This document shows positions 1,613-56,286 of a stretch of 64,000 nt of DNA, in pieces. Position numbers and translations under genes: made by a program. Within the stretch, counting starts at the first letter, position 1; every line of letters starts with the position of its first letter. Origin of the DNA: Macrostomum lignano. Taxonomy: Eukaryota. Location: positions 1 to 64,000 of the forward strand of contig NIVC01000056.1 in the NCBI GenBank assembly GCA_002269645.1, read 5' to 3'. The notes under the pieces are model-generated. The model was not told the origin of the DNA and searched no databases. It worked only from the letters and a program-made list of their open reading frames with translations.

Positions 1613-10407
<8,795 letters not shown>

Positions 10408-27985: not shown

Positions 27986-28393
27986 GGTGCTGGCGCCATT
28001 GGTGCTGGCGCCGTTGGTGCTGGCGCCGTTGGTGCTGGCGCCGTTGGTGCTGGCGCCGTTGGTGCTGGCGCCGTTGGTGCTGGCGCCGTTGGTGCTGGCG
28101 CCGTTGGTGCTGGCGCCGTTGGTGCTGGCGCCGTTGGTGCTGGCGCCGTTGGTGCTGGCGCCGTTGGTGCTGGCGCCGTTGGTGCTGGCGCCGTTGGTGC
28201 TGGCGCCGTTGGTGCTGGCGCCGTTGGTGCTGGCGCCGTTGGTGCTGGCGCCGTTGGTGCTGGCGCCGTTGGTGCTGGCGCCCCTGGTGCTGGCGCCCCT
28301 GGTGCTGGCGCCCCTGGTGCTGGCGCCCCTGGTGCTGGCGCCCCTGGTGCTGGCGCCCCTGGTGCTGGCGCCGTTGGTGCTGGCGCCGTTGGT
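27986..28393. repeat. 15-bp minisatellite (GGTGCTGGCGCCGTT)n with a block of CCCCT variants
   Basis: About 27 copies; stop-free in several frames on both strands. Confidence 0.95.
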
Positions 28394-31614: not shown

Positions 31615-34600
31615 ATGCCGCACAGAACTTGTCTGCAACTTGTCTGCTTTCCGGCACTGCTGCTTTCAGCCCTCTTTGCCCATCACAATTGTCTCGGCCA
31701 GCCAGTCAGCGTCTCGGCCAGGGTGCTGCATCCCACCGGCCGGCTTCGGGTGGGCGACACTGTCCGGATTGAGTGCACCGTGTCCGGACACCGGCCGAGC
31801 CTGGCCGTCCGACTCCGCTGTCCGATCGCCAGCCTGGTGGACAACTGCTTGGAGAACTGCAACCGCGTGTGCGCCGATCCCGCCGTCTGCGCCGAGGAGC
31901 CGCGCCTCCGACAGGTCGCTTGCGCAGTGGTGGACCGCCGGAACGGCACCGTCACCTACGCCTACAACATCAACAACGTGGACACTGACTTCAGCGGCGA
32001 CTGGCAGTGCCGGCACCTCGGCGCCTCCAGCCGGCCGCAGGCGCTGCGGGTGTTCCAGCGACCGCGAATCCTCGGCGTCGCTTTCAACACCTCCGGCGGC
32101 GCGGTGCCCGAGTCCCGGCCGGTTGAGGCCGTCTGCGTCGCCGACGCCGACCCGCTGGCCGGCCGGCTCCAATTCGACTGGCTGCGCGTCGACGCGGCCA
32201 CCGGGCAGAAGGTCGATCTGCCAAGCGGCCGGCAGTTCGTCGTCGACTCCGTCAACGCCACGGCTTCACGGCTGCTGCTGCGGCACGCCGGCCGGTCGGA
32301 CAAGGGCGAATTCGTCTGCCGGGCGCGCAACCCGGCCGGCGGCGAGGACCAGCGGCTCGCCCGGCTGGCCGTCGCCCACCCGCCGTCCGCCGTCCGTCTG
32401 GTGGTCGGGGCGGCGGACCCGCAGCAGGCGGGTGCCCGATTGCCGCTGGACTGCCTGGTGGAGGGCGGCTACCCCGCCAACCAGGTCGCCAGGTACTACC
32501 GTCGACGGCCAGGGACTCCGGAAGCGGCCGAAGGCGAGGCGGACGGAGAGGAGGTTCAGCCGCCGGTGACGCTGCAGGCGGCCGACAATGGTGCCGAGTT
32601 TTTCTGCTGCGCCGGCAGCGTCTGCAGCCGTCGCCAGTCAATCGGCGTCAACTTCCCGCCGGATGGCGGCAGCGGCATCGGCGGTGTCGGCCTGTCACTG
32701 GAGAGCGTCGGGCCGGCCGAGGAGGCGGTCGAGGAGGGCTCCGACTGGCTGTTCGACTGCGAGGCCGCCGCGCCCAGCAACCCGGTGAGCCGCCTGAGCT
32801 GGTCTCTGGTGGAACCATCGGGCCGGGTGCGCCACCTGCCCGACGCTGAGGCCGCCGCCACGGTGACCGGCGACCAGGTGCCGGACGGCCCGTCGGGACT
32901 CCGAGCTCGCAGCCGGCTGGTCCTGCGCGCCAACCGTTGGCTGAGCGGCGCCGACCTGCGCTGCAGCCTCACCTTCTCCGGTCAAGTCCTCGCCGAGCGC
33001 CGGCGCCGACTTCGAGTCGCTTTCCCTCCGTCAGGAGTGACGATGGAGGTCGCCGACGGACCTGCCTCGTCGGATGTCAGCGTTGCGCCGGGAGGCCGCC
33101 TGCGGCTCGTCTGCCGCGTCGCCGAATCCGAGCCGCCAGCCCGCGTCAGCTGGTGGCGCCGGCGCCCCCGGCGACCGCCGACTGGCGACTGGCCAGCCGC
33201 GGCTTCGTCGTCGACGACCAACCTGACGGCGCTGGCGACCAGCCGGCTGGCGCAGTCGGCGGACGGCGAGTTCCCCGGAAGCCGGCTGATCAGCGAGCTG
33301 ACGGTGCCGGACACCGGCCTGGATGCCCACGGCGACGTCTATGAGTGCTCGGCCGCGCACCTGGCACTGCGGCCCGGCGCCACCGTGGCTGCTCAGCTGA
33401 CGGTGCGCATTCAGCACCCGCCGAGCGTCTCCGTCAGTGTCCAGCCGGCCGCAGCGGTCGAGGGCGGCTCAGTGGCGATCGTCTGCGACGCCGAGGGAGG
33501 CTGGCCGCTCGCTGATTCGACGGCAACCGTTGAGTGGCGACACCAGCCAGCGGCGCCGTCGGGGGCGTCAGAGCGTCGGCTGGACAGCGGGGCGCGGGTG
33601 CTGCGCATCGCCAAGACCGACTGGCGGGACGCAGGGCTGTACACCTGCGCCGTCCGGACGCGCGACGACCTGCCGCAGGGCGTTGGCACCGCCACATTGT
33701 CGCTGCTGCACCCACCGAGACCCCTGAGGCTATTCGATGACATTGACGATGGCGATGCTGAGGTCGGCCTGACCTCCTCCGACGTCGGCGAGCCGGCCAG
33801 GCTGCTGGTTCGGGCCGAGGCGAATCCGCCGGCCAAGGCGCTCGAATGGCGGCGCCTCAGCGACAACGGCGAGTCGCCGCAGCAGCCGATGCCGCGAGGT
33901 CGCAGCTTCGCCAGACCGAGCCATGGCGAGTTCGGCCTCGCCATCGACTCGGTGCGACGAAGCGACTTCGGCCTCTACGACTGCCTGCTGGCCAACTCGC
34001 TCGGCCGGCGCCGCTTCCGCGTTCTCCTGGCGCCGCCCGGACCGCCTCGGCCGCCGCGCCGTCTCCGACTGGCTGCCCCGGCTACCGCCGTCTCGGCCAG
34101 GGTGGCCTGGCAGTCCGGCCACAGCGGCGGTCAGCCGCAGACTTTTCAGCTGCAGTGGCGCCGCGCCAACCACCCCGACTGGCCGGCGGCCGGCCTGCAG
34201 CTGTCCGGCCTGGCCGACCGGGGTGAGGGCCGGACGGTCGAGGCGGACCTGTCCGGACTCGAACCCGCGACCTCGTACGCTGTCCGGGTTCGGGCGGTAG
34301 CCGTCAGGCGGTTCGGTCCGAGCCCTTGGACATCGCCGGAGCTGAGCTTCGCCACAAAGCCGCTGCCGGCCATCGCTGCGGCCTCCCTGCGGCTGTCCGG
34401 CTGCTGTCGTCTCGAGTTCGAGCCCCCGGTGCCGGCCGAGTCCTTCACGCGGGTGACGGCGCGGCTGTGCCCAGCTGGAGTTGTCAGCGGCGGCGGCTGC
34501 CGACACCTGCCGCTGCCTGCCGAGGCCGTGCGGCGCGGCTCCGCGGAGTTGGACAAGGCGGGCGGCGCGGCCGACTACCGAGTGTCCCTGGTGGTCTGGG

Positions 34601-35283
34601 ACCGCAACGTCAGCGTGTTCGAGACGCCGCAGCTCAGCGTCAGGGACGGCCGCAGCGTCGGCGGCGAAGGCGGTCGCGGAGGTCGCCAGCAGCCGCCGCC
34701 GTCGGTGCCGGGAGCCCCGCCGTCGGACCTGCTGTTCGGCGCCCTGGCCGGAGCCGCCGTCGCCGCCGTCGCCCTGGTGGCCGCCTGCGGAGTCGCCGCC
34801 GCGCTGCGCTGCCGTCAGCGGCACCGGAGAGGCCGTTTGGCGCGGGCAGCCGCCGCCGCCGGCTTTCAGCAGCAGCAGCAGCAGCTGCGGCACCCGTTGA
34901 GAAGCGCCACGGGGGTCAGCCTGGACGCCATGCTGCAGCAGTGCTCCGGCCCGCTGACCATGGAGATTCCGCCGCCGCCGCCGCCGCTGCCGGCGCAGAT
35001 GCCGCCGGATGTCATCCGCAACGACTGGTGCTGGAGCTGCTCGCTGCAGCCGCCGGCCTCCGCTGCGCAGCTTCATCACCAGCATCACCAGCATCACCAG
35101 CAGCCGCACCAGTTCTGCCCGGTGTTCGTTGCCACGCCGTCTCTGCCAGCCACCAGTGCGACCACAGCTGGGACGGGGAGTCGCAGCCTCTGCGGCACTC
35201 CGCAGCCGCCTCTGCTGCGCCCGCAGCCGCGCTTGGCCACTGAGCAGCGTCCGACCGACGATGAGGCGGTGCCGTTCGACTGA
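31615..35283 (+). CDS. Intronless type I membrane Ig-superfamily adhesion receptor, 1222 aa (nephrin/echinoid-like)
   Basis: Signal peptide; seven Ig units (C...W...D-x-G-x-Y/F-x-C, the 7th lacking its first Cys); FN3 with the nephrin/echinoid-type WQSGHSGGQPQTF motif plus a possible degenerate second FN3; TM LLFGALAGAAVAAVALVAACGVAAAL; Q/P/H-rich cytoplasmic tail. Confidence 0.88.
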   Translation: MPHRTCLQLVCFPALLLSALFAHHNCLGQPVSVSARVLHPTGRLRVGDTVRIECTVSGHRPSLAVRLRCPIASLVDNCLENCNRVCADPAVCAEEPRLRQVACAVVDRRNGTVTYAYNINNVDTDFSGDWQCRHLGASSRPQALRVFQRPRILGVAFNTSGGAVPESRPVEAVCVADADPLAGRLQFDWLRVDAATGQKVDLPSGRQFVVDSVNATASRLLLRHAGRSDKGEFVCRARNPAGGEDQRLARLAVAHPPSAVRLVVGAADPQQAGARLPLDCLVEGGYPANQVARYYRRRPGTPEAAEGEADGEEVQPPVTLQAADNGAEFFCCAGSVCSRRQSIGVNFPPDGGSGIGGVGLSLESVGPAEEAVEEGSDWLFDCEAAAPSNPVSRLSWSLVEPSGRVRHLPDAEAAATVTGDQVPDGPSGLRARSRLVLRANRWLSGADLRCSLTFSGQVLAERRRRLRVAFPPSGVTMEVADGPASSDVSVAPGGRLRLVCRVAESEPPARVSWWRRRPRRPPTGDWPAAASSSTTNLTALATSRLAQSADGEFPGSRLISELTVPDTGLDAHGDVYECSAAHLALRPGATVAAQLTVRIQHPPSVSVSVQPAAAVEGGSVAIVCDAEGGWPLADSTATVEWRHQPAAPSGASERRLDSGARVLRIAKTDWRDAGLYTCAVRTRDDLPQGVGTATLSLLHPPRPLRLFDDIDDGDAEVGLTSSDVGEPARLLVRAEANPPAKALEWRRLSDNGESPQQPMPRGRSFARPSHGEFGLAIDSVRRSDFGLYDCLLANSLGRRRFRVLLAPPGPPRPPRRLRLAAPATAVSARVAWQSGHSGGQPQTFQLQWRRANHPDWPAAGLQLSGLADRGEGRTVEADLSGLEPATSYAVRVRAVAVRRFGPSPWTSPELSFATKPLPAIAAASLRLSGCCRLEFEPPVPAESFTRVTARLCPAGVVSGGGCRHLPLPAEAVRRGSAELDKAGGAADYRVSLVVWDRNVSVFETPQLSVRDGRSVGGEGGRGGRQQPPPSVPGAPPSDLLFGALAGAAVAAVALVAACGVAAALRCRQRHRRGRLARAAAAAGFQQQQQQLRHPLRSATGVSLDAMLQQCSGPLTMEIPPPPPPLPAQMPPDVIRNDWCWSCSLQPPASAAQLHHQHHQHHQQPHQFCPVFVATPSLPATSATTAGTGSRSLCGTPQPPLLRPQPRLATEQRPTDDEAVPFD

Positions 35284-35958: not shown

Positions 35959-36370
35959 GTTGCTAGGCTGTCTAGTTGCTAAGCAGGCGAGTTGCTAGGC
36001 TGTCTAGTTGCTAGGCTGTCTAGTTGCTAGGCTGTCTAGTTGCTAGGCTGTCTAGTTGCTAGGCTGTCTAGTTGCTAGGCTGTCTAGTTGCTAAGCTGTC
36101 TAGTTGCTAAGCAGGCGAGTTGCTAGGCTGTCTAGTTGCTAGGCTGTCTAGTTGCTAAGCTGTCTAGTTGCTAAGCATGTGAGTTGCTAGGCTGTCTAGT
36201 TGCTAAGCAGGCAAGTTGTTAGGCTGTCTAGTTGCTAAGCTGTCTAGTTGCTAAGCTGTCTAGTTGCTAGGCTGTCTAGTTGCTAAGCTGTCTAGTTGCT
36301 AAGCAGGCGAGTTGCTAGGCTGTCTAGTTGCTAAGCTGTCTAGTTGCTAAGCTGTATAGTTGCTAGGCTG
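35959..36370. repeat. 16-bp minisatellite (GTTGCTAGGCTGTCTA)n
   Basis: Tandem unit read directly. Confidence 0.93.
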
Positions 36371-37133
36371 GATTGCCCTAGATTTTGTTACGCAAAAGCA
36401 GAAATTTGACAGTCAAGCCGCTGTCCTCGAACACGCGCCATCTCCCCCTCAAGAAAGCGGTCGAGCTGCTGTGTGGTGTCGAGAAGCTATGAACACGCAG
36501 CACTAGTTGGTCCATTTTTTCTGCTTTCGCAAGAAGTGACTGATGCGATGCCGCATTGACGACAGGCCACCAGATGGCGCTTGTCAAGGATTTCTATTAG
36601 CTTCAGCATCTGGACTGGAAGGAGCCTGGTAGTTTAATAAAATTATGCTGCAGAAAAACTCGGCCTACAGTTGTATGAATATAGTCTTGGGAACAGCCAC
36701 GACTCCCGTCTCTGGTTCTGGGAGTCCTTGTAGAGGGGATAACGATTTTTCGCCATCCTCCAGTCCAGATGCTTCTTATCTTCCAGGCAGTCCTTGGCCA
36801 AATCCTTTTTCGGTGGGAGTTGGGGAATAGCGAATCGCCACTAGCAACCGAGGGGGAGGGAGCGGCATGGGAGACGAATTAGAGAGACACCCAGCGACTG
36901 CCATGTATGGAGGGGATTTCACTAAATGGCTGGCAACAGACAAAACCATTAGCTCGCAAATTTTTGCTGTTTTGCTACCACAAGAATAAGAAGAACAAGA
37001 AACTGCAGCAGCAATGCGAGCTGGATAAAGAATGTCTTTCCGTAGCGGTCAGACTGAATGTACTTTTAGAGTTTTATAATTCACTGTTCTATTCAGGGGG
37101 AGATGGGAGTTGGTGCCTTGTCCATATTCCTTG

Positions 37134-37850
37134 TCTTTTAGTGCCTGTCTTTTTGTGCCTGTCTTTTAGTTTCTGTCTTTCAGTGCCTGTCTTTTAGTGT
37201 CTGTCTTTTAGTGTCTGTCTTTTAGTGTCTGTCTTTTTCTTTCTGTCTTTTATTGTCTGACTTTTAGTGTCTGTCTTTTTGTGCCTGTCTTTTAGTGTCT
37301 GTCTTTTTGTTTCTGTCTTTTAGTGCCTGTCTTTTAGTTTCTGTCTTTTAGTGTCTGTCTTTTAGTGTCTGTCTTTTAGTGTCTGTCTTTTTCTTTCTGT
37401 CTTTTAGTGTCTGTCTTTTAGTGTCTGTCTTTTAGTGTCTGTCTTTTAGTGTCTGTCTTATAGTTTCTGTCTTTTAGTGCCTGTCTTTTAGTGTCTGTCT
37501 TTTTCTTTCTGTCTTTTAGTGTCTGTCTTTTAGTGTCTGTCTTTTAGTGTCTGTCTTTTAGTTTCTGTCTTTTAGTGTCTGTCTTTTAGTGCCTGTCTTT
37601 TAGTGCCTGTCTTTTAGTTTCTGTCTTTTAGTGTCTGTCTTTTTGTTTCTGTCTTTTAGTGCCTGTCTTTTAGTGTCTGTCTTTTAGTGTCTGTCTTTTA
37701 GTTTCTGTCTTTTAGTGTCTGTCTTTTTGTTTCTGTCTTTTTGTTTCTGTCTTTTAGTGTCTGTCTTTTAGTGCCTGTCTTTTAGTTTCTGTCTTTTAGT
37801 GTCTGTCTTTTAGTGTCTGTCTTTTAGTGCCTGTCTTTTATTGCCTGTAC
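37134..37850. repeat. 14-bp minisatellite (TGTCTGTCTTTTAG)n
   Basis: About 50 copies. Confidence 0.93.
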
Positions 37851-37970: not shown

Positions 37971-37976
37971 TTTATT
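37971..37976 (-). promoter_or_regulatory. Candidate polyadenylation signal (AATAAA) of the neuropeptide gene
   Basis: AATAAA on the minus strand, ~135 nt past the stop codon at 38112. Confidence 0.5.
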
Positions 37977-38111: not shown

Positions 38112-38488
38112 TCAGCCGATGGGGCAAGCGCGGCGGTCGTACATGCGGCAGCGCTTGCCCAGTTGAAGCAGCAGGTTGGCGTTGGTGAGCTCTGAAAATT
38201 TGCGTGCGCAATTAAGTTGAAGTTGAAACTGGGGGTCTCAGACGACTCTCGTGTGATTCCCAGCTATGATGGCAGACACCCAGTGCTCAGAGACTGTACA
38301 TGCCTGATTGGAGAGCTATCACTAAACTATAATTTACCTTCACTGTCCCCAGACAGCCGCAGACCCGAGAGCTCGCCGGCAGTGTCAGAATTGACGCCTG
38401 GAATTGGTGCCGCGTCCACCTCTGCTTTTAGAAGAAGAATTACAGCAAAAACTGACAGCAATAAAATGAAGTTGAAAGCTCGCCGCAT
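38112..38488 (-). CDS. Neuropeptide prohormone, 76 aa, 2 exons; predicted C-terminal cyclic peptide CRMYDRRACPIG
   Basis: Exon 1 38488-38338 (151 nt, GAAG|GTAAAT) plus exon 2 38191-38112 (80 nt, TTTTCAG|AG) join in phase 1 to give MRRAFNFILLLSVFAVILLLKAEVDA-APIPGVNSDTAGELSGLRLSGDSEELTNANLLLQL-GKR-CRMYDRRACPIG*. Not in the ORF track. Confidence 0.8.
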
Positions 38489-38573
38489 GCTGGCTGTGGA
38501 ACTAAAATTTCCAAAATACTTGAACCAGGCTGTTCTGCCGAGAGCTGTCGAGTTCTAGAGAGAACTGACTGTC

Positions 38574-38581
38574 TTTTATAG
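38574..38581 (-). promoter_or_regulatory. TATA box (CTATAAAAG) of the neuropeptide gene
   Basis: Canonical TATAAAAG ~90 nt upstream of the ATG at 38488. Confidence 0.55.
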
Positions 38582-38989: not shown

Positions 38990-39710
38990 GCACTCCCCCT
39001 CGCCTTCTTCTCATCTCACTCTCGCCTCCCCTCCCACTCTCCCTCTCCCCTCCCACTCTCTCTCTCCCCTCCCACTCTCCCTCTCCTCCCACTCTCCCTC
39101 TCCCCTCCCACTCTCTCTCTCCCCTACCACTCTCCCTCCCCTCCCACTCTCCCTCTCCTCCCACTCTCCCTCTCCCCTCCCACTCTCTCTCTCCCCTACC
39201 ACTCTCCCTCTCCTCCCACTCTCCCTCTCCTCCCACTCTCCCTCTCCTACCACTCTCCCTCTCCCCTCCTACTCTCTCTCTCCCCTCCCACTCTCCCTCT
39301 CCTCCCACTCTCCCTCTCCTCCCACTCTCCCTCTCCTACCACTCTCCCTCTCCCCTCCTACTCTCTCTCTCCCCTCCCACTCTCCCTCTCCTCCCACTCT
39401 CCCTCTCCTCCCACTCTCCCTCTCCTCCCACTCTCCCTCTCCTACCACTCTCCCTCTCCCCTCCTACTCTCTCTCTCCCCTCCCACTCTCCCTCTCCTCC
39501 CACTCTCCCTCTCCTCCCACTCTCCCTCCCCTCCCACTCTCTCTCTCCCCTACCACTCTCTCTCTCCCCTACCACTCTCCCTCTCCCCTCCCACTCTCCC
39601 TCTCCCCTCCCACTCTCTCTCTCCCCTACCACTCTCTCTCTCCCCTACCACTCACCCTCTCCCCTCCCACTCTCTCTCTCCCCTCCCACCCTCCCACTCC
39701 TCTCCCTTCT
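38990..39710. repeat. Polypyrimidine array (CTCCCACTCTCCCTCTC-like)
   Basis: Seen directly. Confidence 0.92.
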
Positions 39711-39819
39711 ACCATTTTTTCTAGCCATAATCTTTGATGCCAGATTTCATTGATGATGAAGCAAGCTATGGTGTGTACGAAAAACTCGTGATTGTGAAAT
39801 TGAGAGCTGGATGGTGCGA

Positions 39820-40397
39820 TGGAGATAGACAGGGAGAGAGGGAGAGTGATTGAGAGACAGGGAGAGTGATTGGGAGAGAGACAGGGTGAGTGATGGAGAG
39901 AGACAGGAAGATTGATTGAGAGATAGGGAGAGCGATGGAGAGAGACTGGAGAGAGACAGAGAGATTGATAGAGAGAGACAGGGAGAGTGATGGAGAGAGA
40001 CACGGAGAGTGATGGAGAGAGACAGGGAGAGTGATGGAGAGAGACAGGGAGAGTGATGGAGAGACAGGGAGAGTGATGGAGAGACAGGGAGAGTGATGGA
40101 GAGACAGGGATAGTGATGGAGAGAGACACGGAGAGTGATGGAGAGAGACACGGAGAGTGATGGAGAGAGACACGGAGAGTGATGGAGAGAGACAGGGAGA
40201 GTGGTGGAGAGAGACAGGGAGAGTGATGGAGAGAGACAGGGAGAGTGGTGGAGAGAGACAGGGAGAGTGATGGAGAGAGACAGGGAGAGTGATGGAGAGA
40301 GACAGGGAGAGTGATGGAGAGAGACAGGGAGAGTGATGGAGAGAGACAGGGAGAGTGATGGAGAGACAGGGAGAGTGATGGAGAGAGACAGGGAGAG
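39820..40397. repeat. Purine-rich 22-bp array (GGGAGAGTGATGGAGAGAGACA)n
   Basis: Seen directly. Confidence 0.92.
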
Positions 40398-40758
40398 ACC
40401 ACAGTGAGCAGCACGGGCGGATAAGCAGTGTAGTCAGCCCGCAGTGCAGTGCATTGTGGATCAAAGCATGGAGATACGGCAAGGCGGGAAGGCATCTAAT
40501 TTTGCCTTCGTTTCCTCAATGCGCAGCTGTTGCTGCCTCAGTCTGTTTCAGAATTCTTCCTCCAAATTTGGGATATTCGATTCTGCGACGGTGCTGGCTG
40601 GGTTAGGGTCGGGGACGCCAAGCTGCCTGAGGATTTCGATAATAGAAAATGGTTTGTTATCTCTAGGAAATTAATAATTCTTCTTGGATTTAACTTATTT
40701 TTCGCTAGATATTCTTTCTGTATTTGGACAGCGTGCTAAGATTTAGAGTTACAATTTC

Positions 40759-41217
40759 AGAGTGTTATGAACAATGCCAGAGTGTTATGAACAATGCCAG
40801 AGTGTTATGAACAATGCAAGAGTGTTATGAACCATTTCAGAGTGTTATGAACAATGCCAGAGTGTTATGAACAATTCCAGAGTGTTATGAACAATGCCAG
40901 AGTGTTGTGAACAATGCCAGAGTGTTATGAACAATGCCAGAGTGTTATGAACAATTCCAGAGTGTTATGAACAATGCCAGAGTGTTATGAACAATGCCAG
41001 AGTGTTATGAACAATGCCAGAGTGTTATGAACAATGCCAGAGTGTTATGAACAATGCCAGAGTGTTATGAACAATGCCAGAGTGTTATGAACAATGCCAG
41101 AGTGTTATGAACAATGCCAGAGTGTTATGAACAATGCCAGAGTGTTATGAACAATGCCAGAGTGTTATGAACAATGCCAGAGTGTTATGAACAATGCCAG
41201 AGTGTTATGAACAATGC
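40759..41217. repeat. 20-bp minisatellite (AGAGTGTTATGAACAATGCC)n
   Basis: About 23 near-identical copies. Confidence 0.95.
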
Positions 41218-42274
41218 CCCACAGTCTAACACAGAGGAACTCCCGCACTGCATCAAACAATGTGCAGCATTAATATTTTTCCGCCAGCAAAGAGCCGGCA
41301 AAAATGTTATCTGCCGCAAGCAGCACGCAAATCCGCAACAAGCGGCGCAGCCCAGCACCCCCAACCCGAACTACCAAAGCGATCTGCCTGTCCCTCAGCC
41401 GACTTTGGGCTTCCCCGATCCCCATGGGACCTGAATTTGTCCGCCCCGAACCCCAGGGCGGAACAGACGCTGCCGCCAGTCATCTGTCGAGCAGGACGGT
41501 AAAAGTACAAACGGATGGTTGCTTACAGCGAGGCACAGGAGCTCAGTGATAAAGTCTGACTCCACCGCCATGCACCTTATTTAGCATTCATTTTTGGTAA
41601 AAAAAAGTTCCCAACAGCCTCTGATCCTCTGATCCAGTCCTTGAGCTGTCAATTTTACAAACCAGATTCAACGGATCGAAATGATTCAGCAAATTTTTGT
41701 GCGCTATGTGTCACCTTCCAATCCAGACGTCTAGCAGTCCCTGGTTTAAGATAAGAAACGCATTCAAACAAATTTTATTTTGAGAATGCAGAATGCAGAA
41801 GGAAAATTATCTAGAAGGGAGATTTTCTCAACTGAATAATTGCCTCCATCTCCAGCTTCTCTTGAGTTTGCGGGTATATTTATAGAAGCAGCAATTTTCA
41901 TGCAGCGATTAAAAAGATTTTTTGTTTTGTGCAACTTTTCTCTCCGTTATCTTTTTAGTCTTTGAGTAAGCGGGGATTTTATAAATATGGGATTAAAAGA
42001 GATTACAGAAATGCAAATGATTTGGTGAAATTTGTTCATGGATGAGGTGATATTTTGTCGCAAATTGGCTGGCTGGGGGCACTCCACTCTCTTTGCAGGC
42101 TCTCTTTGCTTTGAGGGCCGACAGAACAGCGCTGCTTATGAGAGCTCCAACACTTCAGATTTGGGGCCTTCCAATTTCGAGGTTCTCAGAGAGCAAGCTA
42201 AAAATGTAAAAATGTAAATCTAACATTATTAAATCATTTGCTGCACGGCTCCGGACCGCGCTCGAAGTTGACGC

Positions 42275-42428
42275 TCTATGACTCACTCTATGACTCACTC
42301 TATGACTCACTCTATGACTCACTCTATAACTCACTGAGTGACTCACTCTATGACTCACCGGGTGAATCACTCTATGACTCACTCTATGACTCACTGAGTG
42401 AATCACTCTATGACTCACTCTATGACTC
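42275..42428. repeat. 12-bp array (CTATGACTCACT)n
   Basis: About 12 units, most containing TGACTCA. Confidence 0.92.
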
Positions 42429-42717
42429 AACGAAATCACCCATTAAATTTAGCTTCTCAATGCTCCAATATCGGCCCCAGCAAGCTAGCTAGATGAAAGA
42501 AAAATCTTATATACAGAAATAAGAGTATTCAAAAAAGTATTTCAATGAATTCTAATGAGGCAGACGAGTTGGGGAGCTGACGTAAAAAAAGAGGACTCAG
42601 GCGAAATAATATAGAATGAGAATTTGCATTGTTCTGCTGGGTGTGCTGCTCGAGTGCATTGTGAGTAACTCAAGCTGCTCTCCTTAATTCAGTTATAAAT
42701 CGTCAGCTTCCTCAGCT

Positions 42718-44895: not shown

Positions 44896-46796
44896 TTTGG
44901 ATTGAAAGTTAGAGTGAGAGTGAGAGTGAGATTGAGAGTGAGATTGAGATTGAGATTAAGAGTGAGATTGAGAGTGAGATTGAGAGTGAGATTGAGAGTG
45001 AGATTGAGATTGAGAGTTGGAGTGAAATTGAGAGTGAGATTGAGAGTGAGAGTGAGAGTGAGATTGAGAGTGAGATTGAGAGTGAGATTGAGAGTGAGAG
45101 TGAGATTGAGAGTGAGATTGAGAGTGATATTGAGATTGAGAGTGAGAGTGAGAGGTAGAGAGTGAATTAATTAGTGAATTGAGTGAATTGAGCGGCTAAA
45201 TTAATTGGCCAGTGACGTGCTGTGCGATTCACACCCGTGAGGCCAGCCTCCAAGGCTCAGAGAGTGCACATGCCTGACCATGAGACACCCTGAGTAAGCT
45301 TGCGAGTGCTCAGGGTCCAGCGAACTGAGCATGACTTGCTGGCTGCGGGTCAACTGTCGCCTTGGCTTGCAGATATAGTAAATCCTCCCCAAGCATCTGC
45401 TCACATCGTAATCGTTGTTGAAGTCCCAGAGCAGCAGGGAGCCGTCCAGCAGAGCCGGGCTTCGCAGGTAAATCACCAGGTTGTTCACGCAGTAGTCGGT
45501 GCGGCACAGGCGCTGCAGGTGCTGCTGGAAGGCCACCTTCATCCCGCCGGCCGCGTGCAGATTCTCGGCCACGGTTTCCGCCAGTCGGCGGGATCGCCGG
45601 TCGGCGTAGAAAGTCTGCACCGCGGCGGCCGAGAAGCCGGCGTCGCGCAGCTTGGCGTGCACCCGCGCGACCGCCGCCTCCGTGCCGTCCAGTCCGGCGT
45701 CCGGGTTCCAGCCGCCGGCCACCAGCACAGCCTGGTCGCAGCTCTGCTCCAGCGGGCAGTGCGCCGTCACGTCGGTCAGACTCGGACAGCTCCCGCTTCC
45801 GGCCGAGCCAGACCGGGCGTCGTCGTGGACGGCGGAGCCAGCGGCGGCGGCCTGCAGGGGGCACTGGGGACGACGCGAGAATGGGTAGGCGGGCGGGCAG
45901 GGCGCGAACCCGGGCAGCTGGGCGCAGGCGAGGCGCTGGGTCAGGTGCGGCGTCTCCGTGTCGCTCTCGTAGGCCACCAGCGGCAGGAAGTGGTGCTCGC
46001 AGTGCCTGTAGGCTGGGTGGCCTTGTGTGGCTCGCCAGAACAGCGAGGTGCGACAGTGCGGGATGGCGGCCGGGTAAAGGCAGCCGCCCTTTGCTGTGGG
46101 AAGAGTGGCAGGATGGCTTCTTTGATTCCTTTGATCCTCCGCCCCATTTGCTTCCTTTGATCCTCCGCCCTTTTGATTCCCCTGATCCTCCACCCTTTTG
46201 ATTCCTTTAATCCTCCGCCATATTTGCTTCCTTTGATCCTCCGCCCTTCTGATTCCTTTGATCCTTCGCCCTGTTTACTTTCTTTGATCCTCTGTCCCAT
46301 TTGCTTCCTTTGATCCACCACCCCTGTATTCCTTTGATCCCTCGTCCCCTGGATTCCATTGATTCTCCGCCTCCTTCTGATTTCTTTGATCCTCCGCCCG
46401 AAGCCACTCACCCAGAGTAGTTCCTGCCAGCCTGCGGCACCTGTTCCTATCGAATCTCAGGTGAAGGAAGAACACGAACAGCAGGTGGCCGAACTGCTTC
46501 CTAGGAAACGGGTCCAGCACCAGCACGCCGTCCCTGGCGTGCAGGAAGCGCCGCTGCTGCAACACCTTCAGCCGGTATCGAGTCCAGGACGACGGCTTCG
46601 CCAGGTGGACTCGGAACTCGGACTTCGGCAGGGCTTGAACGTCCCGGCACTCCTCCGGGCTGGTGACCTCGGTCAGGTCGCAGGACAGGGACATCACGTG
46701 ATCGTGGGCAGCGGCGGCCAGCTCTTCGTCAGAGGAGACCGCGGCCAGGACGGCGCTCGGCGCCAGAATCAGCAGGACCAGCAGCGCCAGCTTCAT
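42718..46796 (-). CDS. Secreted Cys-rich protein with a C-terminal peptidase C13/caspase-fold (clan CD)-like domain, probably inactive, 512 aa, 5 exons
   Basis: Exons 46796-46412, 46093-45405, 44325-44072, 43513-43483 (31-nt micro-exon), 42897-42718; GT-AG, phases 1, 0, 2, 0; total 1539 nt. Signal peptide MKLALLVLLILAPSAVLA; legumain/GPI8-like AVLVAGGW, NLVIYLRSP and RVVVFLDSNF. Gene model is well supported; the family call is inference. Confidence 0.75.
42960..43410. repeat. (GAGAGT/GAGATT)n hexamer array, intron 4 of the clan-CD-like gene
   Basis: Seen directly; the right part has an 18-bp variant containing TTAGGG. Confidence 0.92.
43891..44074. repeat. 34-bp minisatellite (ACTGAGTCTCACCTTGATAAACCACAGAGATTAG)n overlapping a splice donor
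   Basis: Five units plus a partial unit that includes the exon-3 donor at 44071. Confidence 0.93.
44460..45165. repeat. (GAGAGT/GAGATT)n hexamer array, intron 2 of the clan-CD-like gene
   Basis: Seen directly; explains the RVRVRL ORF. Confidence 0.93.
46125..46400. repeat. ~24-bp degenerate minisatellite (TTCCTTTGATCCTCCGCCC..) filling intron 1 of the clan-CD-like gene
   Basis: Lies between acceptor 46094 and donor 46411. Confidence 0.85.
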
Positions 46797-54120: not shown

Positions 54121-56286
54121 TTAGTCCAGGTAAATGGCAAACACGGTGGCCACAGCGTACAGCGAATTGTTGCGGAACTGGTAGCTGGCGAAATTGTCGG
54201 TGGCGTCATTCCACAGACAGCGGCTGCTGATGGCCAGGCCGTGGCCGCCGTTCATGCCGATGGAGCTCACCACGACAAACTTGTAGCGGCCAAGCGCCTG
54301 CAGCTCCTTGATGCGACCGCGGATCACCTGTGGAATGTTTGGCGGGTAAATGGAGCTAGTTGGGATTTGAGTGAATGATGCTGTGTGACTAGCTGTTGAG
54401 ATTTGAGTGAATGATGCTGTGTGACTAGCTGTTGAGATTTGAGTGAATGGTGCTGTGTGACTAGTTGGGATTTGAGTGAATGGTGCTGTGTGACTAGTTG
54501 GGATTTGAGTGAATGGTGCTGTGTGACTAGTTGGGATTTGAGTGAATGGTGCTGCGTGACTGGTTGGGAATTGGAATGAATTATTGCTTGCTGGTCCAAG
54601 GAGATTCACCTGGCTGATGTTTTTGCTCATCTCCCTGGCGAAGTCCTCCTCGTAGCGCTCCTCGGCCAGATATCCTTCCAGGACGTCCTTGAGAATTTTG
54701 TGCACTTCGGCCACGGGGAAATTGCGGTGCGGACCAAGCTGGTAGCTGTTCTCCAGCTTCACCGCGCCGTGATGAGGCAGCTCGTCAATCTGCGACACGG
54801 AGCTGATCGGTCTGAGACGGGAGGTTGCGGAGAAAAAAGTCCTAATAAATCTCGAAGAATGAAGATCAAAATTAGAGAAATTTGAAAATTAAAAAAATGT
54901 TTTGAAAACAGTGAAAATCGTAGGGAAACGTGAATAAAAGTAAAACAAAGTAGAAATTGTGATGCAGCAACTTTTTGATGCAATGACGTCAGTTTAAAAG
55001 ATAGTGACACCATTTCCGGAATAATGAAACTGATCCTAGGGATTATGGCGCTAATCCAATGATAATGGTGCTTATCCTATGGATAATGGCTGTAATCCAA
55101 TGGTAATGGCGCTTATCCTATGGATAATGGTGCTAATCCTATGAATAATGGTGCTAATCTTATGGATAATGGTGCTAATCCTATGGATAATGGTGCTAAT
55201 CCTATGGATAATGGCGCTTATCCAATGGATAATGGCGCTAATCCAATGGATAATGGCTCTAATCCAATGGATAATGGCGCTTATCCAATGGATAATGGCG
55301 CTAATCCAATGGATAATGGCGCTAATCCTATGGATAATGGCGCTAATCCAATGGATAGTGGCGCTAATCCAATGGATAATGACGCTAATCCAATGGATAA
55401 TGGCGCTAATCCAATGGATAATGACGCTAATCCAATGGATAATGACGCTAATCCAATGGATAATGGCGCTAATCCAATGGATAATGACGCTAATCCAATG
55501 GATAATGACGCTAATCCAATGGATAATGGCGCTAATCCTATTGATAATAGTGCAACCCCTGAGATCAACGGTGCCCAAATTTGAGTAGAGTGCATCGCAT
55601 CGCAGTGTTGATAAAAAGTAAAAAAACAACACAAGCACTCAGTAACTTTCAGGATACTGTGAATTAGAAATTCCTAATTATGATCATTATGAAAACTATT
55701 GCAAATTGGACTCTTACTAACACTTTTTTCGAAAGAGCAACCCTGTCGCAATCTTCTTTCGCTGCCAAGGCACAGACAGGATAGGCGAGACAGGCGTCAG
55801 CTTATAAATCAAAGCGGGTGTGAAGGCCAGGCATTGCAACAGACAATAGAAATCGCAAGCGGACAGAAGAACCAATGAAAAAGAGAGCCGAACAAAAGCC
55901 ACGAAGGAATGTAAAAAAGGGTTTGAAATTTTTTAAAACACCTTTCGTCATCCTCAGCAATGAAGCTCTTTCTGCTGCTGTAAGGACACATTTATGGGTT
56001 TGCATAAATTTTAAGATACAAGTACACTTATAAAATATTTTGTTAATATGGGCCAAAGTTTGTGACAAAGGCAAAAAAATTTATTGGCTCTATATTGAAA
56101 ATATTTATAACATTAGATTATGGTTGAAATGTATTCATATGTTAACTACTACTGAATTCCAAAGCAAACTTACTGGCTAAACCTTCCTCCTGGGAGATGC
56201 TTCATCTGGAAGTGGCCAGTCGCTGGGGCATTGCTCTGCTTGCGCAGATTCCTAGCTGCCCTGTCTTTTGCCAAGTCGCTGGCCAT
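54121..56286 (-). CDS. TCTEX1D1: Tctex1 domain-containing protein 1 (dynein light chain Tctex-type 5), 173 aa, 3 exons
   Basis: Exons 56286-56174, 54811-54610, 54327-54121; phases 2 and 0 match. MASDLAKDRAA N-terminus, ENSYQLGP, RYKFVV and SSRCLWNDATDNFASYQFRNNSLYAVATVFAIY are Tctex1D1-type motifs. Confidence 0.9.
54356..54570. repeat. 33/36-bp minisatellite (GAGTGAATGGTGCTGTGTGACTAGTTGGGATTT)n in TCTEX1D1 intron 2
   Basis: About 6 units. Confidence 0.9.
55040..55555. repeat. 21-bp minisatellite (GGATAATGGCGCTAATCCAAT)n in TCTEX1D1 intron 1
   Basis: About 24 copies; explains the MDNGANP ORF. Confidence 0.95.

What the first reader, a model, noticed from the sequence alone, without database searches (positions are those of the whole stretch)
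38112..38581. Hidden neuropeptide gene: ring-expanded oxytocin/vasopressin-like peptide without neurophysin
Seen: a compact two-exon minus-strand gene missed by the ORF track, with TATA (38574-38581), ATG 38488, a 146-bp GT-AG intron with matching phase, TGA 38112 and AATAAA 37971. The 76-aa product has a signal peptide, an acidic spacer, a GKR site and a C-terminal 12-mer CRMYDRRACPIG. Established: GKR is the prohormone-convertase plus amidation signal, and OT/VP peptides are C-x4-C-P-x-G followed by neurophysin. Inference: this peptide keeps Cys1 and the C-P-x-G tail but has a C-x7-C ring, sits at the C-terminus and lacks neurophysin. Predicted products are CRMYDRRACPIG (or CPI-amide) and ...ELTNANLLLQL-amide. 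From memory, a neurophysin-less OT/VP-type 'platytocin' was described in polyclad flatworms; I cannot verify that this is its orthologue, and it could be a new family.
Basis: partly seen in the sequence, partly recalled or inferred. Interest (0 to 1): 0.88.

Follow-up and report, generated by a model that had tools for sequence, protein, structure and literature searches.

The report
Unannotated cyclic-peptide precursor gene candidate
A small two-exon gene model in the flatworm Macrostomum lignano would encode a 76-residue secreted precursor of a short ring-shaped amidated peptide; it looks real and hormone-like, but no relatives or expression data support it and it is not an oxytocin/vasopressin gene.

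Summary
The window is Macrostomum lignano contig NIVC01000056.1, positions 1-64000. The 76-aa product has a textbook signal peptide, an acidic pro-region, GKR and a C-terminal CRMYDRRACPIG.

The core pattern (signal peptide plus KR-Cys-loop-stop) occurs at about 0.027 loci per shuffled window. The promoter and poly(A) signals lower that further. Codon usage gives only weak support.

No homologue, paralogue, annotation or paper was found. Missing annotation says little, because the GenBank annotation of this genome is a filtered subset of the transcript-based models.

Best reading (about 0.55): a real orphan prohormone-type gene. Signal peptidase, a PC2-type convertase and amidation would yield cyclic CRMYDRRACPI-NH2 (Cys1-Cys9) and a 35-residue amidated pro-peptide.

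The oxytocin/vasopressin assignment fails four of five defining features, and M. lignano already has canonical precursors reported. The architecture is closest to precursors that carry a Cys-loop peptide at the C-terminus (MCH, somatostatin types), without sequence membership. Interest is moderate to low until a transcript or an orthologue is shown.

The parts
38574..38580 (-). TATA box (TATAAAA), 92 nt upstream of the start codon
   Evidence: It is the only TATAAA within 400 nt upstream. Window density is 1.95e-4 per nt per strand.
38489..38573 (-). Promoter-proximal region and putative 5' UTR. It has no ATG and contains in-frame stops. An acceptor-like TTTTAG ends at 38502, 13 nt before the ATG.
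   Evidence: The transcription start site was not determined. The TTTTAG leaves open an upstream UTR exon or spliced-leader trans-splicing, which affects 39% of M. lignano genes (PMC5730564).
38411..38488 (-). Start codon and predicted signal peptide MRRAFNFILLLSVFAVILLLKAEVDA, with cleavage predicted after Ala26 (Val at -3, Ala at -1)
   Evidence: GRAVY 1.45. It has a basic n-region (RR), a 17-residue hydrophobic core and a small-residue c-region. This is a heuristic reading; SignalP was not available.
38338..38410 (-). Rest of exon 1: first part of the acidic pro-region (APIPGVNSDTAGELSGLRLSGDSE plus the first base of the Glu51 codon)
   Evidence: the whole pro-peptide has pI 4.05 and charge -4.
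38192..38337 (-). 146-bp phase-1 intron, AAG|GTAAAT ... AAATTTTCAG|AG, GC 0.45
   Evidence: The splice sites resemble confirmed M. lignano introns in the same window (GTGAGG/GTGAGT/GTAAGT ... TTTTTTCAG/CCCCAG/CTTCAG). No RNA evidence was available.
38160..38191 (-). Exon 2, end of the pro-region (ELTNANLLLQL)
   Evidence: Exon 2 has GC 0.65, GC3 0.85 and a codon log-likelihood of +17 bits.
38151..38159 (-). Gly62-Lys63-Arg64: amidation donor plus dibasic convertase site
   Evidence: The function is inferred from established prohormone processing rules.
38115..38150 (-). C-terminal 12-mer CRMYDRRACPIG. The predicted product is cyclic CRMYDRRACPI-NH2 with a Cys1-Cys9 disulfide.
   Evidence: predicted [M+H]+ 1380.6446; pI 8.96.
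38112..38114 (-). Stop codon TGA
37971..37976 (-). Poly(A) signal AATAAA, 135 nt after the stop

Best explanation
A real, unannotated, lineage-restricted (orphan) gene of Macrostomum lignano that encodes a 76-residue prepropeptide of the neuropeptide or peptide-hormone type.

Proposed mechanism (all steps inferred from sequence):
1. Transcription starts downstream of the TATA box, and the 146-bp intron is removed.
2. The 26-residue signal peptide directs the product into the secretory pathway and is cut after Ala26.
3. A PC2-type convertase cuts after Lys63-Arg64, and a carboxypeptidase trims the basic residues.
4. Peptidylglycine amidating monooxygenase uses Gly62 and the C-terminal Gly76 as amide donors.

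Products: a 35-residue acidic pro-peptide ending in ...LLLQL-NH2, and an 11-residue cationic ring peptide, CRMYDRRACPI-NH2, closed by a Cys1-Cys9 disulfide. The ring peptide is the likelier signalling molecule and would presumably act on a cell-surface receptor. It belongs to no described peptide family.
For: - The gene anatomy is complete and self-consistent. It has a TATA box at -92, the first ATG with A at -3, upstream in-frame stops, consensus-like splice sites resembling verified local introns, a stop codon, and AATAAA at +135.
- The product has a strong signal peptide, an acidic spacer, GKR and a C-terminal Gly.
- The joint core pattern is rare by chance: 0.027 loci per shuffled window, and only this locus in the real window.
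- The chosen frame is the only one of six with a positive codon score. Exon 2 is GC3-rich (0.85), like local genes, while the intron and flanks are AT-richer.
- M. lignano has a PC2 homologue that is expressed in the nervous system and is essential (PMC4490696).
- Missing annotation is uninformative. The GenBank set is a filtered subset of TransDecoder-assessed transcript models, with non-coding and repeat-overlapping transcripts removed (PMC5730564). Even the neighbouring 1222-aa Ig/FN3 ORF is not among the called genes.
Against: - There is no transcript, splice-junction or peptide evidence.
- No homologue was found in 5.8 billion word-indexed proteins, in 1.84 billion representatives read by phmmer, by exact look-up in about 15 billion, in JGI metagenomes or in the papers and supplements searched.
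- There is no paralogue in the window.
- The codon-usage score is intermediate: +11.5 bits in total, with exon 1 at -5.6. Of stop-free windows outside known genes, 23% score as high.
- The chance filters were built after the fact.
- The locus is a 1.1-kb island between minisatellite arrays.
- Neuronal expression and receptor action are pure inference.
Confidence: 0.55

Rival explanations
1. Not a gene. An ATG with a hydrophobic run and a Cys-containing open frame sit near each other by chance in unique DNA between repeat arrays, and a permissive reader stitched them together.
For: - No homologue, annotation or expression evidence was found.
- Exon 1 has a slightly negative codon score, and the total score is matched by 23% of stop-free non-genic windows.
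- 4 of 150 shuffled windows produced a comparable core pattern. On that rate, a genome of thousands of such windows would hold many chance cases.
Against: The core pattern coincides with a correctly placed TATA box, the first ATG in good context, extended splice consensus, a poly(A) signal, two Gly amide donors and a GC3-rich exon 2. Multiplying the rough probabilities gives about 1e-4 per window or less.
Confidence: 0.25
2. A real secreted peptide gene whose product comes from a non-neural gland. It could be a defence peptide, a seminal-fluid peptide or another exocrine peptide. The model would be the signal - acidic pro-piece - KR - cationic Cys-loop layout seen in amphibian skin peptides and in small cyclic antimicrobial peptides such as bactenecin or the tigerinins (from my own knowledge).
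For: It has the same anatomy as the best explanation. The mature peptide is cationic (pI 8.96) and follows an acidic pro-piece (pI 4.05). It is an orphan, as is common for fast-evolving secreted effectors.
Against: At 11-12 residues and a net charge of about +2, it is small and weakly amphipathic for a membrane-active peptide. The two amidation signals and the single dibasic site are most typical of neuroendocrine precursors. No tandem gene family is present in the window.
Confidence: 0.13
3. [quoted passage not shown]
For: The precursor plan is the same: a short precursor with a signal peptide, a spacer, a dibasic site and a two-Cys peptide at the very C-terminus (PMC4772807). Arg is penultimate to the second Cys, as in MCH-type peptides. 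A Met and a Tyr lie inside the ring.
Against: - The Met is not adjacent to Cys1.
- The ring has 7 residues between the cysteines, against 8 (vertebrate) or 10 (ambulacrarian) for MCH types.
- There is no CxxxFxxxxxxC motif or other somatostatin-type motif.
- In the 2016-2018 papers read here, MCH-type peptides outside chordates are reported only from ambulacrarians.
- No profile or sequence search linked the peptide to any family.
Confidence: 0.05
4. One reading: a ring-expanded, neurophysin-less derivative of the oxytocin/vasopressin family.
For: The peptide has Cys1 and a C-P-x-G tail. The tail CPIG is identical to that of sepiatocin, CFWTTCPIG-NH2 (PMC7181382). A GKR is present in the precursor.
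Against: - The peptide is at the C-terminus, not directly after the signal peptide.
- The ring is Cys1-Cys9, not Cys1-Cys6.
- Asn5 is absent, and the GKR precedes the peptide instead of following it.
- The terminal Gly cannot become Gly-NH2.
- There is no neurophysin.
- M. lignano has separate VP/vasotocin-type precursors, and no clear VP/OT-type receptor was found in it (PMC8896804).
- A four-residue match is within chance given the many families a reader could compare.
Confidence: 0.03

Closest known systems
[quoted passage not shown]
   Same: Both are short precursors. The Cys-loop peptide is the last element, preceded by a spacer and a dibasic site. A basic residue is penultimate to the second Cys.
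   Different: The ring has 7 residues between the cysteines, not 8 or 10. Met is not next to Cys1. The peptide is 11-12 residues, not 19-28. It carries a predicted C-terminal amide. There is no detectable sequence homology. In the papers read, MCH types outside chordates are reported only from ambulacrarians.
Somatostatin / allatostatin-C / urotensin-II type precursors
   Same: The disulfide-bridged peptide sits at the extreme C-terminus of the precursor, released at a dibasic site (PMC4772807).
   Different: None of the family motifs is present (CxxxFxxxxxxC; allatostatin-C C-x6-C and urotensin-II C-x4-C, the last two from my own knowledge). The ring size is different and the tail is Pro-Ile-amide.
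Vasopressin/oxytocin-type precursors, including flatworm platytocin
   Same: It has two Cys forming a ring, a C-P-x-G tail (identical to sepiatocin's CPIG) and a GKR motif in the precursor.
   Different: The position in the precursor, the ring size, the missing Asn5, the fate of the terminal Gly and the absent neurophysin all differ. M. lignano has separate canonical precursors (PMC8896804).
Orphan 'secreted peptide prohormone' genes of planarians (Schmidtea spp-1 to spp-19; PMC2953531)
   Same: Both are flatworm-restricted small prohormone genes. They are recognisable only by a signal peptide plus convertase and amidation sites, and standard annotation misses them.
   Different: The planarian genes were validated by mass spectrometry and in situ hybridisation. 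This one has no experimental support and no detectable similarity to them.

Membership tests
Vasopressin/oxytocin-type neuropeptide precursor | The neuropeptide lies immediately after the N-terminal signal peptide | tested here: not met
   The Cys-loop peptide is residues 65-76, the last 12 of the precursor, and 38 residues separate it from the signal peptide. Definition from PMC7181382 and PMC4772807.
Vasopressin/oxytocin-type neuropeptide precursor | Cys1-Cys6 ring (C-x4-C) | tested here: not met
   The ring is C-x7-C (CRMYDRRAC). All invertebrate members seen in the excerpt of PMC7181382 are C-x4-C.
Vasopressin/oxytocin-type neuropeptide precursor | C-P-x-G tail ending in Gly-NH2, made from a following G-K-R | tested here: not met
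   The C-P-I-G tail is present, but the stop codon follows it directly. The Gly would be the amide donor (giving Ile-NH2) or stay as a free acid. The GKR lies upstream of the peptide.
Vasopressin/oxytocin-type neuropeptide precursor | C-terminal neurophysin domain (Cys-rich) | tested here: not met
   The precursor ends 12 residues after KR. Pfam gives no hit. No further exon can be fitted before the AATAAA.
Vasopressin/oxytocin-type neuropeptide precursor | Activates a VP/OT-type GPCR | not testable with these tools
   This needs a receptor assay. PMC8896804 reports no clear VP/OT-type receptor in M. lignano.
MCH-type neuropeptide precursor | A two-Cys peptide at the C-terminus of a short precursor, preceded by a dibasic site | tested here: met
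   KR at residues 63-64, peptide at 65-76, 76 aa in all. Definition from PMC4772807.
MCH-type neuropeptide precursor | Met or Ile directly after the first Cys | tested here: not met
   The sequence is Cys-Arg-Met, so Met is one position later.
MCH-type neuropeptide precursor | Lys or Arg penultimate to the second Cys | tested here: met
   The sequence is Arg-Ala-Cys. This is weak evidence in an Arg-rich peptide.
MCH-type neuropeptide precursor | Ring of 8 (vertebrate) or 10 (ambulacrarian) residues between the cysteines, and alignable sequence | tested here: not met
   There are 7 residues between the cysteines, and no search linked it to any family.
Somatostatin / allatostatin-C type | CxxxFxxxxxxC or a related conserved ring motif | tested here: not met
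   The ring is RMYDRRA. It has no Phe or Trp-Lys core (motif from PMC4772807).
Generic neuropeptide / peptide-hormone precursor | N-terminal signal peptide, dibasic cleavage site(s), and Gly amide donor(s) in a short non-globular protein | tested here: met
   The signal peptide was judged by heuristics only.
Generic neuropeptide / peptide-hormone precursor | Transcribed and spliced, expressed in neurons or endocrine cells, and the mature peptide is detectable | not testable with these tools
   No M. lignano RNA-seq, in situ or peptidomic data could be reached. The exact product is absent from the 15-billion-protein collection.
Generic neuropeptide / peptide-hormone precursor | Conservation of the mature peptide and cleavage sites in related genomes or gene copies | tested here: inconclusive
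   Two homeologous contigs were fetched (L002, L003). Both stop about 2 kb short of the locus. No other Macrostomum sequence was available.

The most novel reading that the evidence does not exclude
The peptide is a genuine derivative of the oxytocin/vasopressin lineage. [quoted passage not shown] A less dramatic and much more probable novel reading (about 0.4) is that it founds an undescribed Macrostomum- or flatworm-restricted family of cyclic amidated neuropeptides hidden in ORFs shorter than 100 aa.
Probability: 0.03. Interest if true: 0.8.

Novelty: new member of a known kind. Interest (0 to 1): 0.3.

Why it matters
If it is transcribed, this would add an unannotated cyclic amidated peptide to the signalling repertoire of a flatworm model for regeneration and reproduction.

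It would also illustrate a systematic blind spot. The GenBank annotation of this genome comes from TransDecoder-assessed transcripts, and non-coding or repeat-overlapping models were removed. Very short prohormones lying between repeat arrays can therefore be missing.

It would not change the picture of oxytocin/vasopressin evolution, because the family assignment is not supported.

Tried and rejected
**Homology searches with the 76-aa product.** All were empty: Pfam, the word-indexed search of 5.8 billion proteins, phmmer against 1.84 billion representatives, exact look-up in about 15 billion and JGI metagenome contigs.

**Exact look-ups in public assemblies.**
- The unspliced 53-aa exon-1 ORF is not on record.
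- The spliced product is not accepted by that tool.

**Literature.**
- The peptide strings occur in no held paper.
- They are also absent from the supplements of the polyclad larval atlas and the xenacoelomorph neuropeptidome.
- The platytocin supplement and McVeigh 2009 are not held.

**Paralogues and repeats.** There is no second copy in the window and none in two of the three fetched M. lignano loci, L001 and L002. Pattern searches of all three loci found no copy of exon 2.

**Reaching the homeologous copy.**
- PP4R3 cluster members gave contigs NIVC01003335.1 and NIVC01002136.1.
- The 10-kb flank limit ends both loci about 2 kb short of the candidate. L003 ends inside the 16-bp minisatellite, and contig NIVC01003335.1 itself runs out about 1.4 kb past the end of L002.
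- Nearer anchors failed. None of nine nearby ORF products, nor the Ig/FN3, LRR or PurA-like ORFs, is on record.

**Other readings considered and dropped.**
- The antisense 113-aa ORF (38217-38558, + strand) has negative codon scores in all three reverse frames.
- NPY/NPF-type was dropped because there is no RxRF/Y-amide.
- Luqin-type was dropped because there is no RF/RW-amide.
- CRF/DH44-like or PDF-like readings of the 35-mer rest only on a loose resemblance of its Leu-rich amidated end. These last three comparisons are from memory and were not tested.

**RNA scans.** Rfam and tRNA scans found nothing relevant.

Full report
**What the window is.** The large ORFs are metazoan: an Ig/fibronectin-III protein, EF-hand (EFCAB6) exons, PP4R3 exons and a Tctex-1 domain.
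- A search with the PP4R3 exons returned a 97%-identical Macrostomum lignano protein, BOX15_Mlig023888g1.
- Its gene lies at 16415-24878 of contig NIVC01000056.1 of assembly GCA_002269645.1, the same coordinates as in the window.
- The annotated protein threads exactly through the first three window exons before my simple aligner stalled at the fourth.
- The window is therefore positions 1-64000 of that contig, from a free-living marine flatworm.
- Local genes have GC-rich exons and AT-richer introns of 70 to 2734 bp, with GTGAGG/GTGAGT/GTAAGT donors and pyrimidine-CAG acceptors.

On the minus strand:
- CTATAAAA lies at 38581-38574.
- The first ATG downstream of it is at 38488. It has A at -3, in-frame stops upstream and no intervening ATG.
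- Exon 1 is 38488-38338.
- The intron is 146 bp and phase 1 (38337-38192, AAG|GTAAAT...TTTTCAG|AG).
- Exon 2 is 38191-38112 and ends in TGA.
- AATAAA lies at 37976-37971, 135 nt past the stop.
- The spliced product is MRRAFNFILLLSVFAVILLLKAEVDAAPIPGVNSDTAGELSGLRLSGDSEELTNANLLLQLGKRCRMYDRRACPIG.
- Without splicing the frame stops after 53 residues.

**Is it more than chance?** I scanned both strands for an ATG ORF with a signal-peptide-like start that reaches [KR]R-C-x4-10-C-x0-5-stop, either directly or through any GT-AG intron of 40-1000 bp.
- The real window gives this locus only. 150 block shuffles give 0.027 loci per window, and the reversed sequence gives none.
- From motif densities in the window, a TATAAAA 40-150 nt upstream has a chance of about 0.02, and an AATAAA 50-300 nt downstream about 0.17.
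- Treating these as independent gives about 1e-4 per window, before counting the extended splice consensus and the two Gly amide donors. The filters were chosen after seeing the locus, so this is a rough guide.
- Codon usage helps only a little. With local genes as the reference, the proposed frame is the only positive one of six (+12.9 bits). The intron and flanks are negative. Exon 2 has GC3 0.85, against GC 0.45 for the intron and 0.40-0.43 for the flanks.
- Against a whole-window background the total is +11.5 bits (exon 1 -5.6, exon 2 +17.1). This is exceeded by 23% of stop-free windows outside known genes and is lower than 90% of known coding windows.

**Relatives and annotation.**
- The product matches nothing in Pfam, 5.8 billion word-indexed proteins, 1.84 billion representatives read in full by phmmer, an exact look-up in about 15 billion proteins or metagenome contigs.
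- There is no second copy in the window, and no held paper or checked supplement contains the peptide strings.
- The missing annotation is not evidence against the gene. The GenBank annotation comes from TransDecoder-assessed transcript models, from which non-coding and repeat-overlapping transcripts were removed (PMC5730564). From my own knowledge, TransDecoder's default minimum ORF is 100 aa.
- The locus is a 1.1-kb unique island between a 14-bp minisatellite (37132-37848) and long CT-rich arrays (39009-40397).
- Even the 1222-aa Ig/FN3 ORF next door is not among the called genes.

**Attempt at a within-genome comparison.** M. lignano is a hidden polyploid (PMC10468722, abstract seen).
- PP4R3 cluster members led to two syntenic contigs, L002 and L003.
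- L002 is 95.5% identical to the window in intergenic DNA and 99.9% identical across the Ig/FN3 gene. Such copies would therefore reveal constraint.
- Both loci end about 2 kb short of the candidate. L003 ends inside the 16-bp minisatellite that matches window 35959-36370. Contig NIVC01003335.1 itself runs out about 1.4 kb beyond the end of L002.
- No closer anchor gene is on record. The homeologous copy should lie about 2-3 kb beyond NIVC01002136.1:40616. This is the most informative computation I could not run.

**How it most likely works (inferred).**
- The N-terminus has two Arg, a 17-residue hydrophobic core, and Val at -3 and Ala at -1 before Ala27. That is a classical signal peptide.
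- The pro-region is acidic (pI 4.05) and ends in Gly-Lys-Arg.
- The last 12 residues are cationic (pI 8.96), with Cys at positions 1 and 9 and a terminal Gly.
- Standard prohormone processing would give APIPGVNSDTAGELSGLRLSGDSEELTNANLLLQL-NH2 and disulfide-closed CRMYDRRACPI-NH2.
- M. lignano has a PC2 homologue that is expressed in the nervous system and is essential (PMC4490696).
- Two amide donors and one dibasic site in a 50-residue pro-protein are typical of neuroendocrine precursors. The same layout also occurs in exocrine defence peptides, so the cell type remains open.
- An internal Arg-Arg within the ring could be a second cleavage site. I consider that less likely.

**Comparison with known families: vasopressin/oxytocin.**
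- These precursors place a C-x4-C-P-x-G peptide directly after the signal peptide, followed by G-K-R and neurophysin (PMC7181382; PMC4772807).
- Here only the CPxG tail matches. It is identical to sepiatocin's CPIG.
- Position, ring size, the fate of the Gly and neurophysin all fail.
- The platytocin paper finds VP/vasotocin-type precursors in M. lignano by reciprocal BLAST, finds no clear receptor there, and does not describe platytocin as lacking neurophysin (PMC8896804).

**Comparison with known families: C-terminal Cys-loop precursors.** The precursor plan is closest to MCH-type and somatostatin-type precursors, where a two-Cys peptide ends the protein after a dibasic site. Of the MCH features, the basic residue before Cys2 is present. 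The Met next to Cys1 and the ring size are not. The somatostatin motif is absent. I therefore file it under no family.

**Verdict.**
- The 'hidden secreted-peptide gene' reading is plausible: about 0.7 that it is a real gene, and about 0.55 for the full prohormone mechanism.
- The oxytocin/vasopressin reading is not supported (about 0.03).
- It would be a new, orphan member of a well-known kind of gene.
- Interest is moderate to low until expression or conservation is shown.

Noticed in passing
window 1-64000: The window is Macrostomum lignano assembly GCA_002269645.1, contig NIVC01000056.1, positions 1-64000. Two syntenic homeologous contigs exist (NIVC01003335.1 and NIVC01002136.1), carrying the same EFCAB6 - PP4R3 - Ig/FN3 order.
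   Followed up: yes
window 31615-35283 (+): A single 1222-aa ORF with Ig and fibronectin-III domains and about 73% GC. It is not among the genes called in the GenBank annotation. It is 99.9% identical to the copy on NIVC01003335.1, while the adjacent intergenic DNA is about 95.5% identical. This suggests a real, constrained, unannotated gene.
   Followed up: partly
window 6739-10407 (-): An EFCAB6-like gene made of two very long exons separated by a 70-bp AT-rich intron (about 8720-8790). The best hits outside the species are only 35-38% identical (Dreissena, Holothuria, Bugula).
   Followed up: partly
window 45200-46750 (-): A second ORF starts with a strong signal-peptide-like sequence (MKLALLVLLILAPSAVLAAV...). 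It continues after a repeat-filled gap into a Cys-containing ORF with no Pfam match. It may be another unannotated secreted protein.
   Followed up: no
window 35959-36370, 37132-37848, 39009-39702, 39834-40397, 40758-41218, 42274-42429: A dense series of minisatellite arrays (units of 16, 14, 17/72/89, 22/44/66, 20 and 12 bp) brackets the candidate gene. One homeologous contig ends about 1.4 kb past the end of the fetched locus, near where the window has the 16-bp array.
   Followed up: partly
window 38502-38503 (-): An acceptor-like TTTTAG lies 13 nt upstream of the start codon. The mRNA could therefore be spliced-leader trans-spliced or carry an upstream UTR exon instead of, or as well as, starting after the TATA box.
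   Followed up: no
window 27994-28084 (+): ARAGORN calls a 91-nt tRNA-Thr(GGT) inside a 15-bp tandem repeat that reads APAPT in one frame. This is probably a false positive.
   Followed up: no
window 38217-38558 (+): A 113-aa TTG-start ORF runs antisense across exon 1 and the intron of the candidate. Codon scores on that strand are negative in all three frames, so it is probably a mirror ORF.
   Followed up: yes
window 54121-54798 (-): An ORF with the C-terminal two-thirds of a Tctex-1 dynein light-chain domain. The first part of the domain must be on an upstream exon.
   Followed up: no
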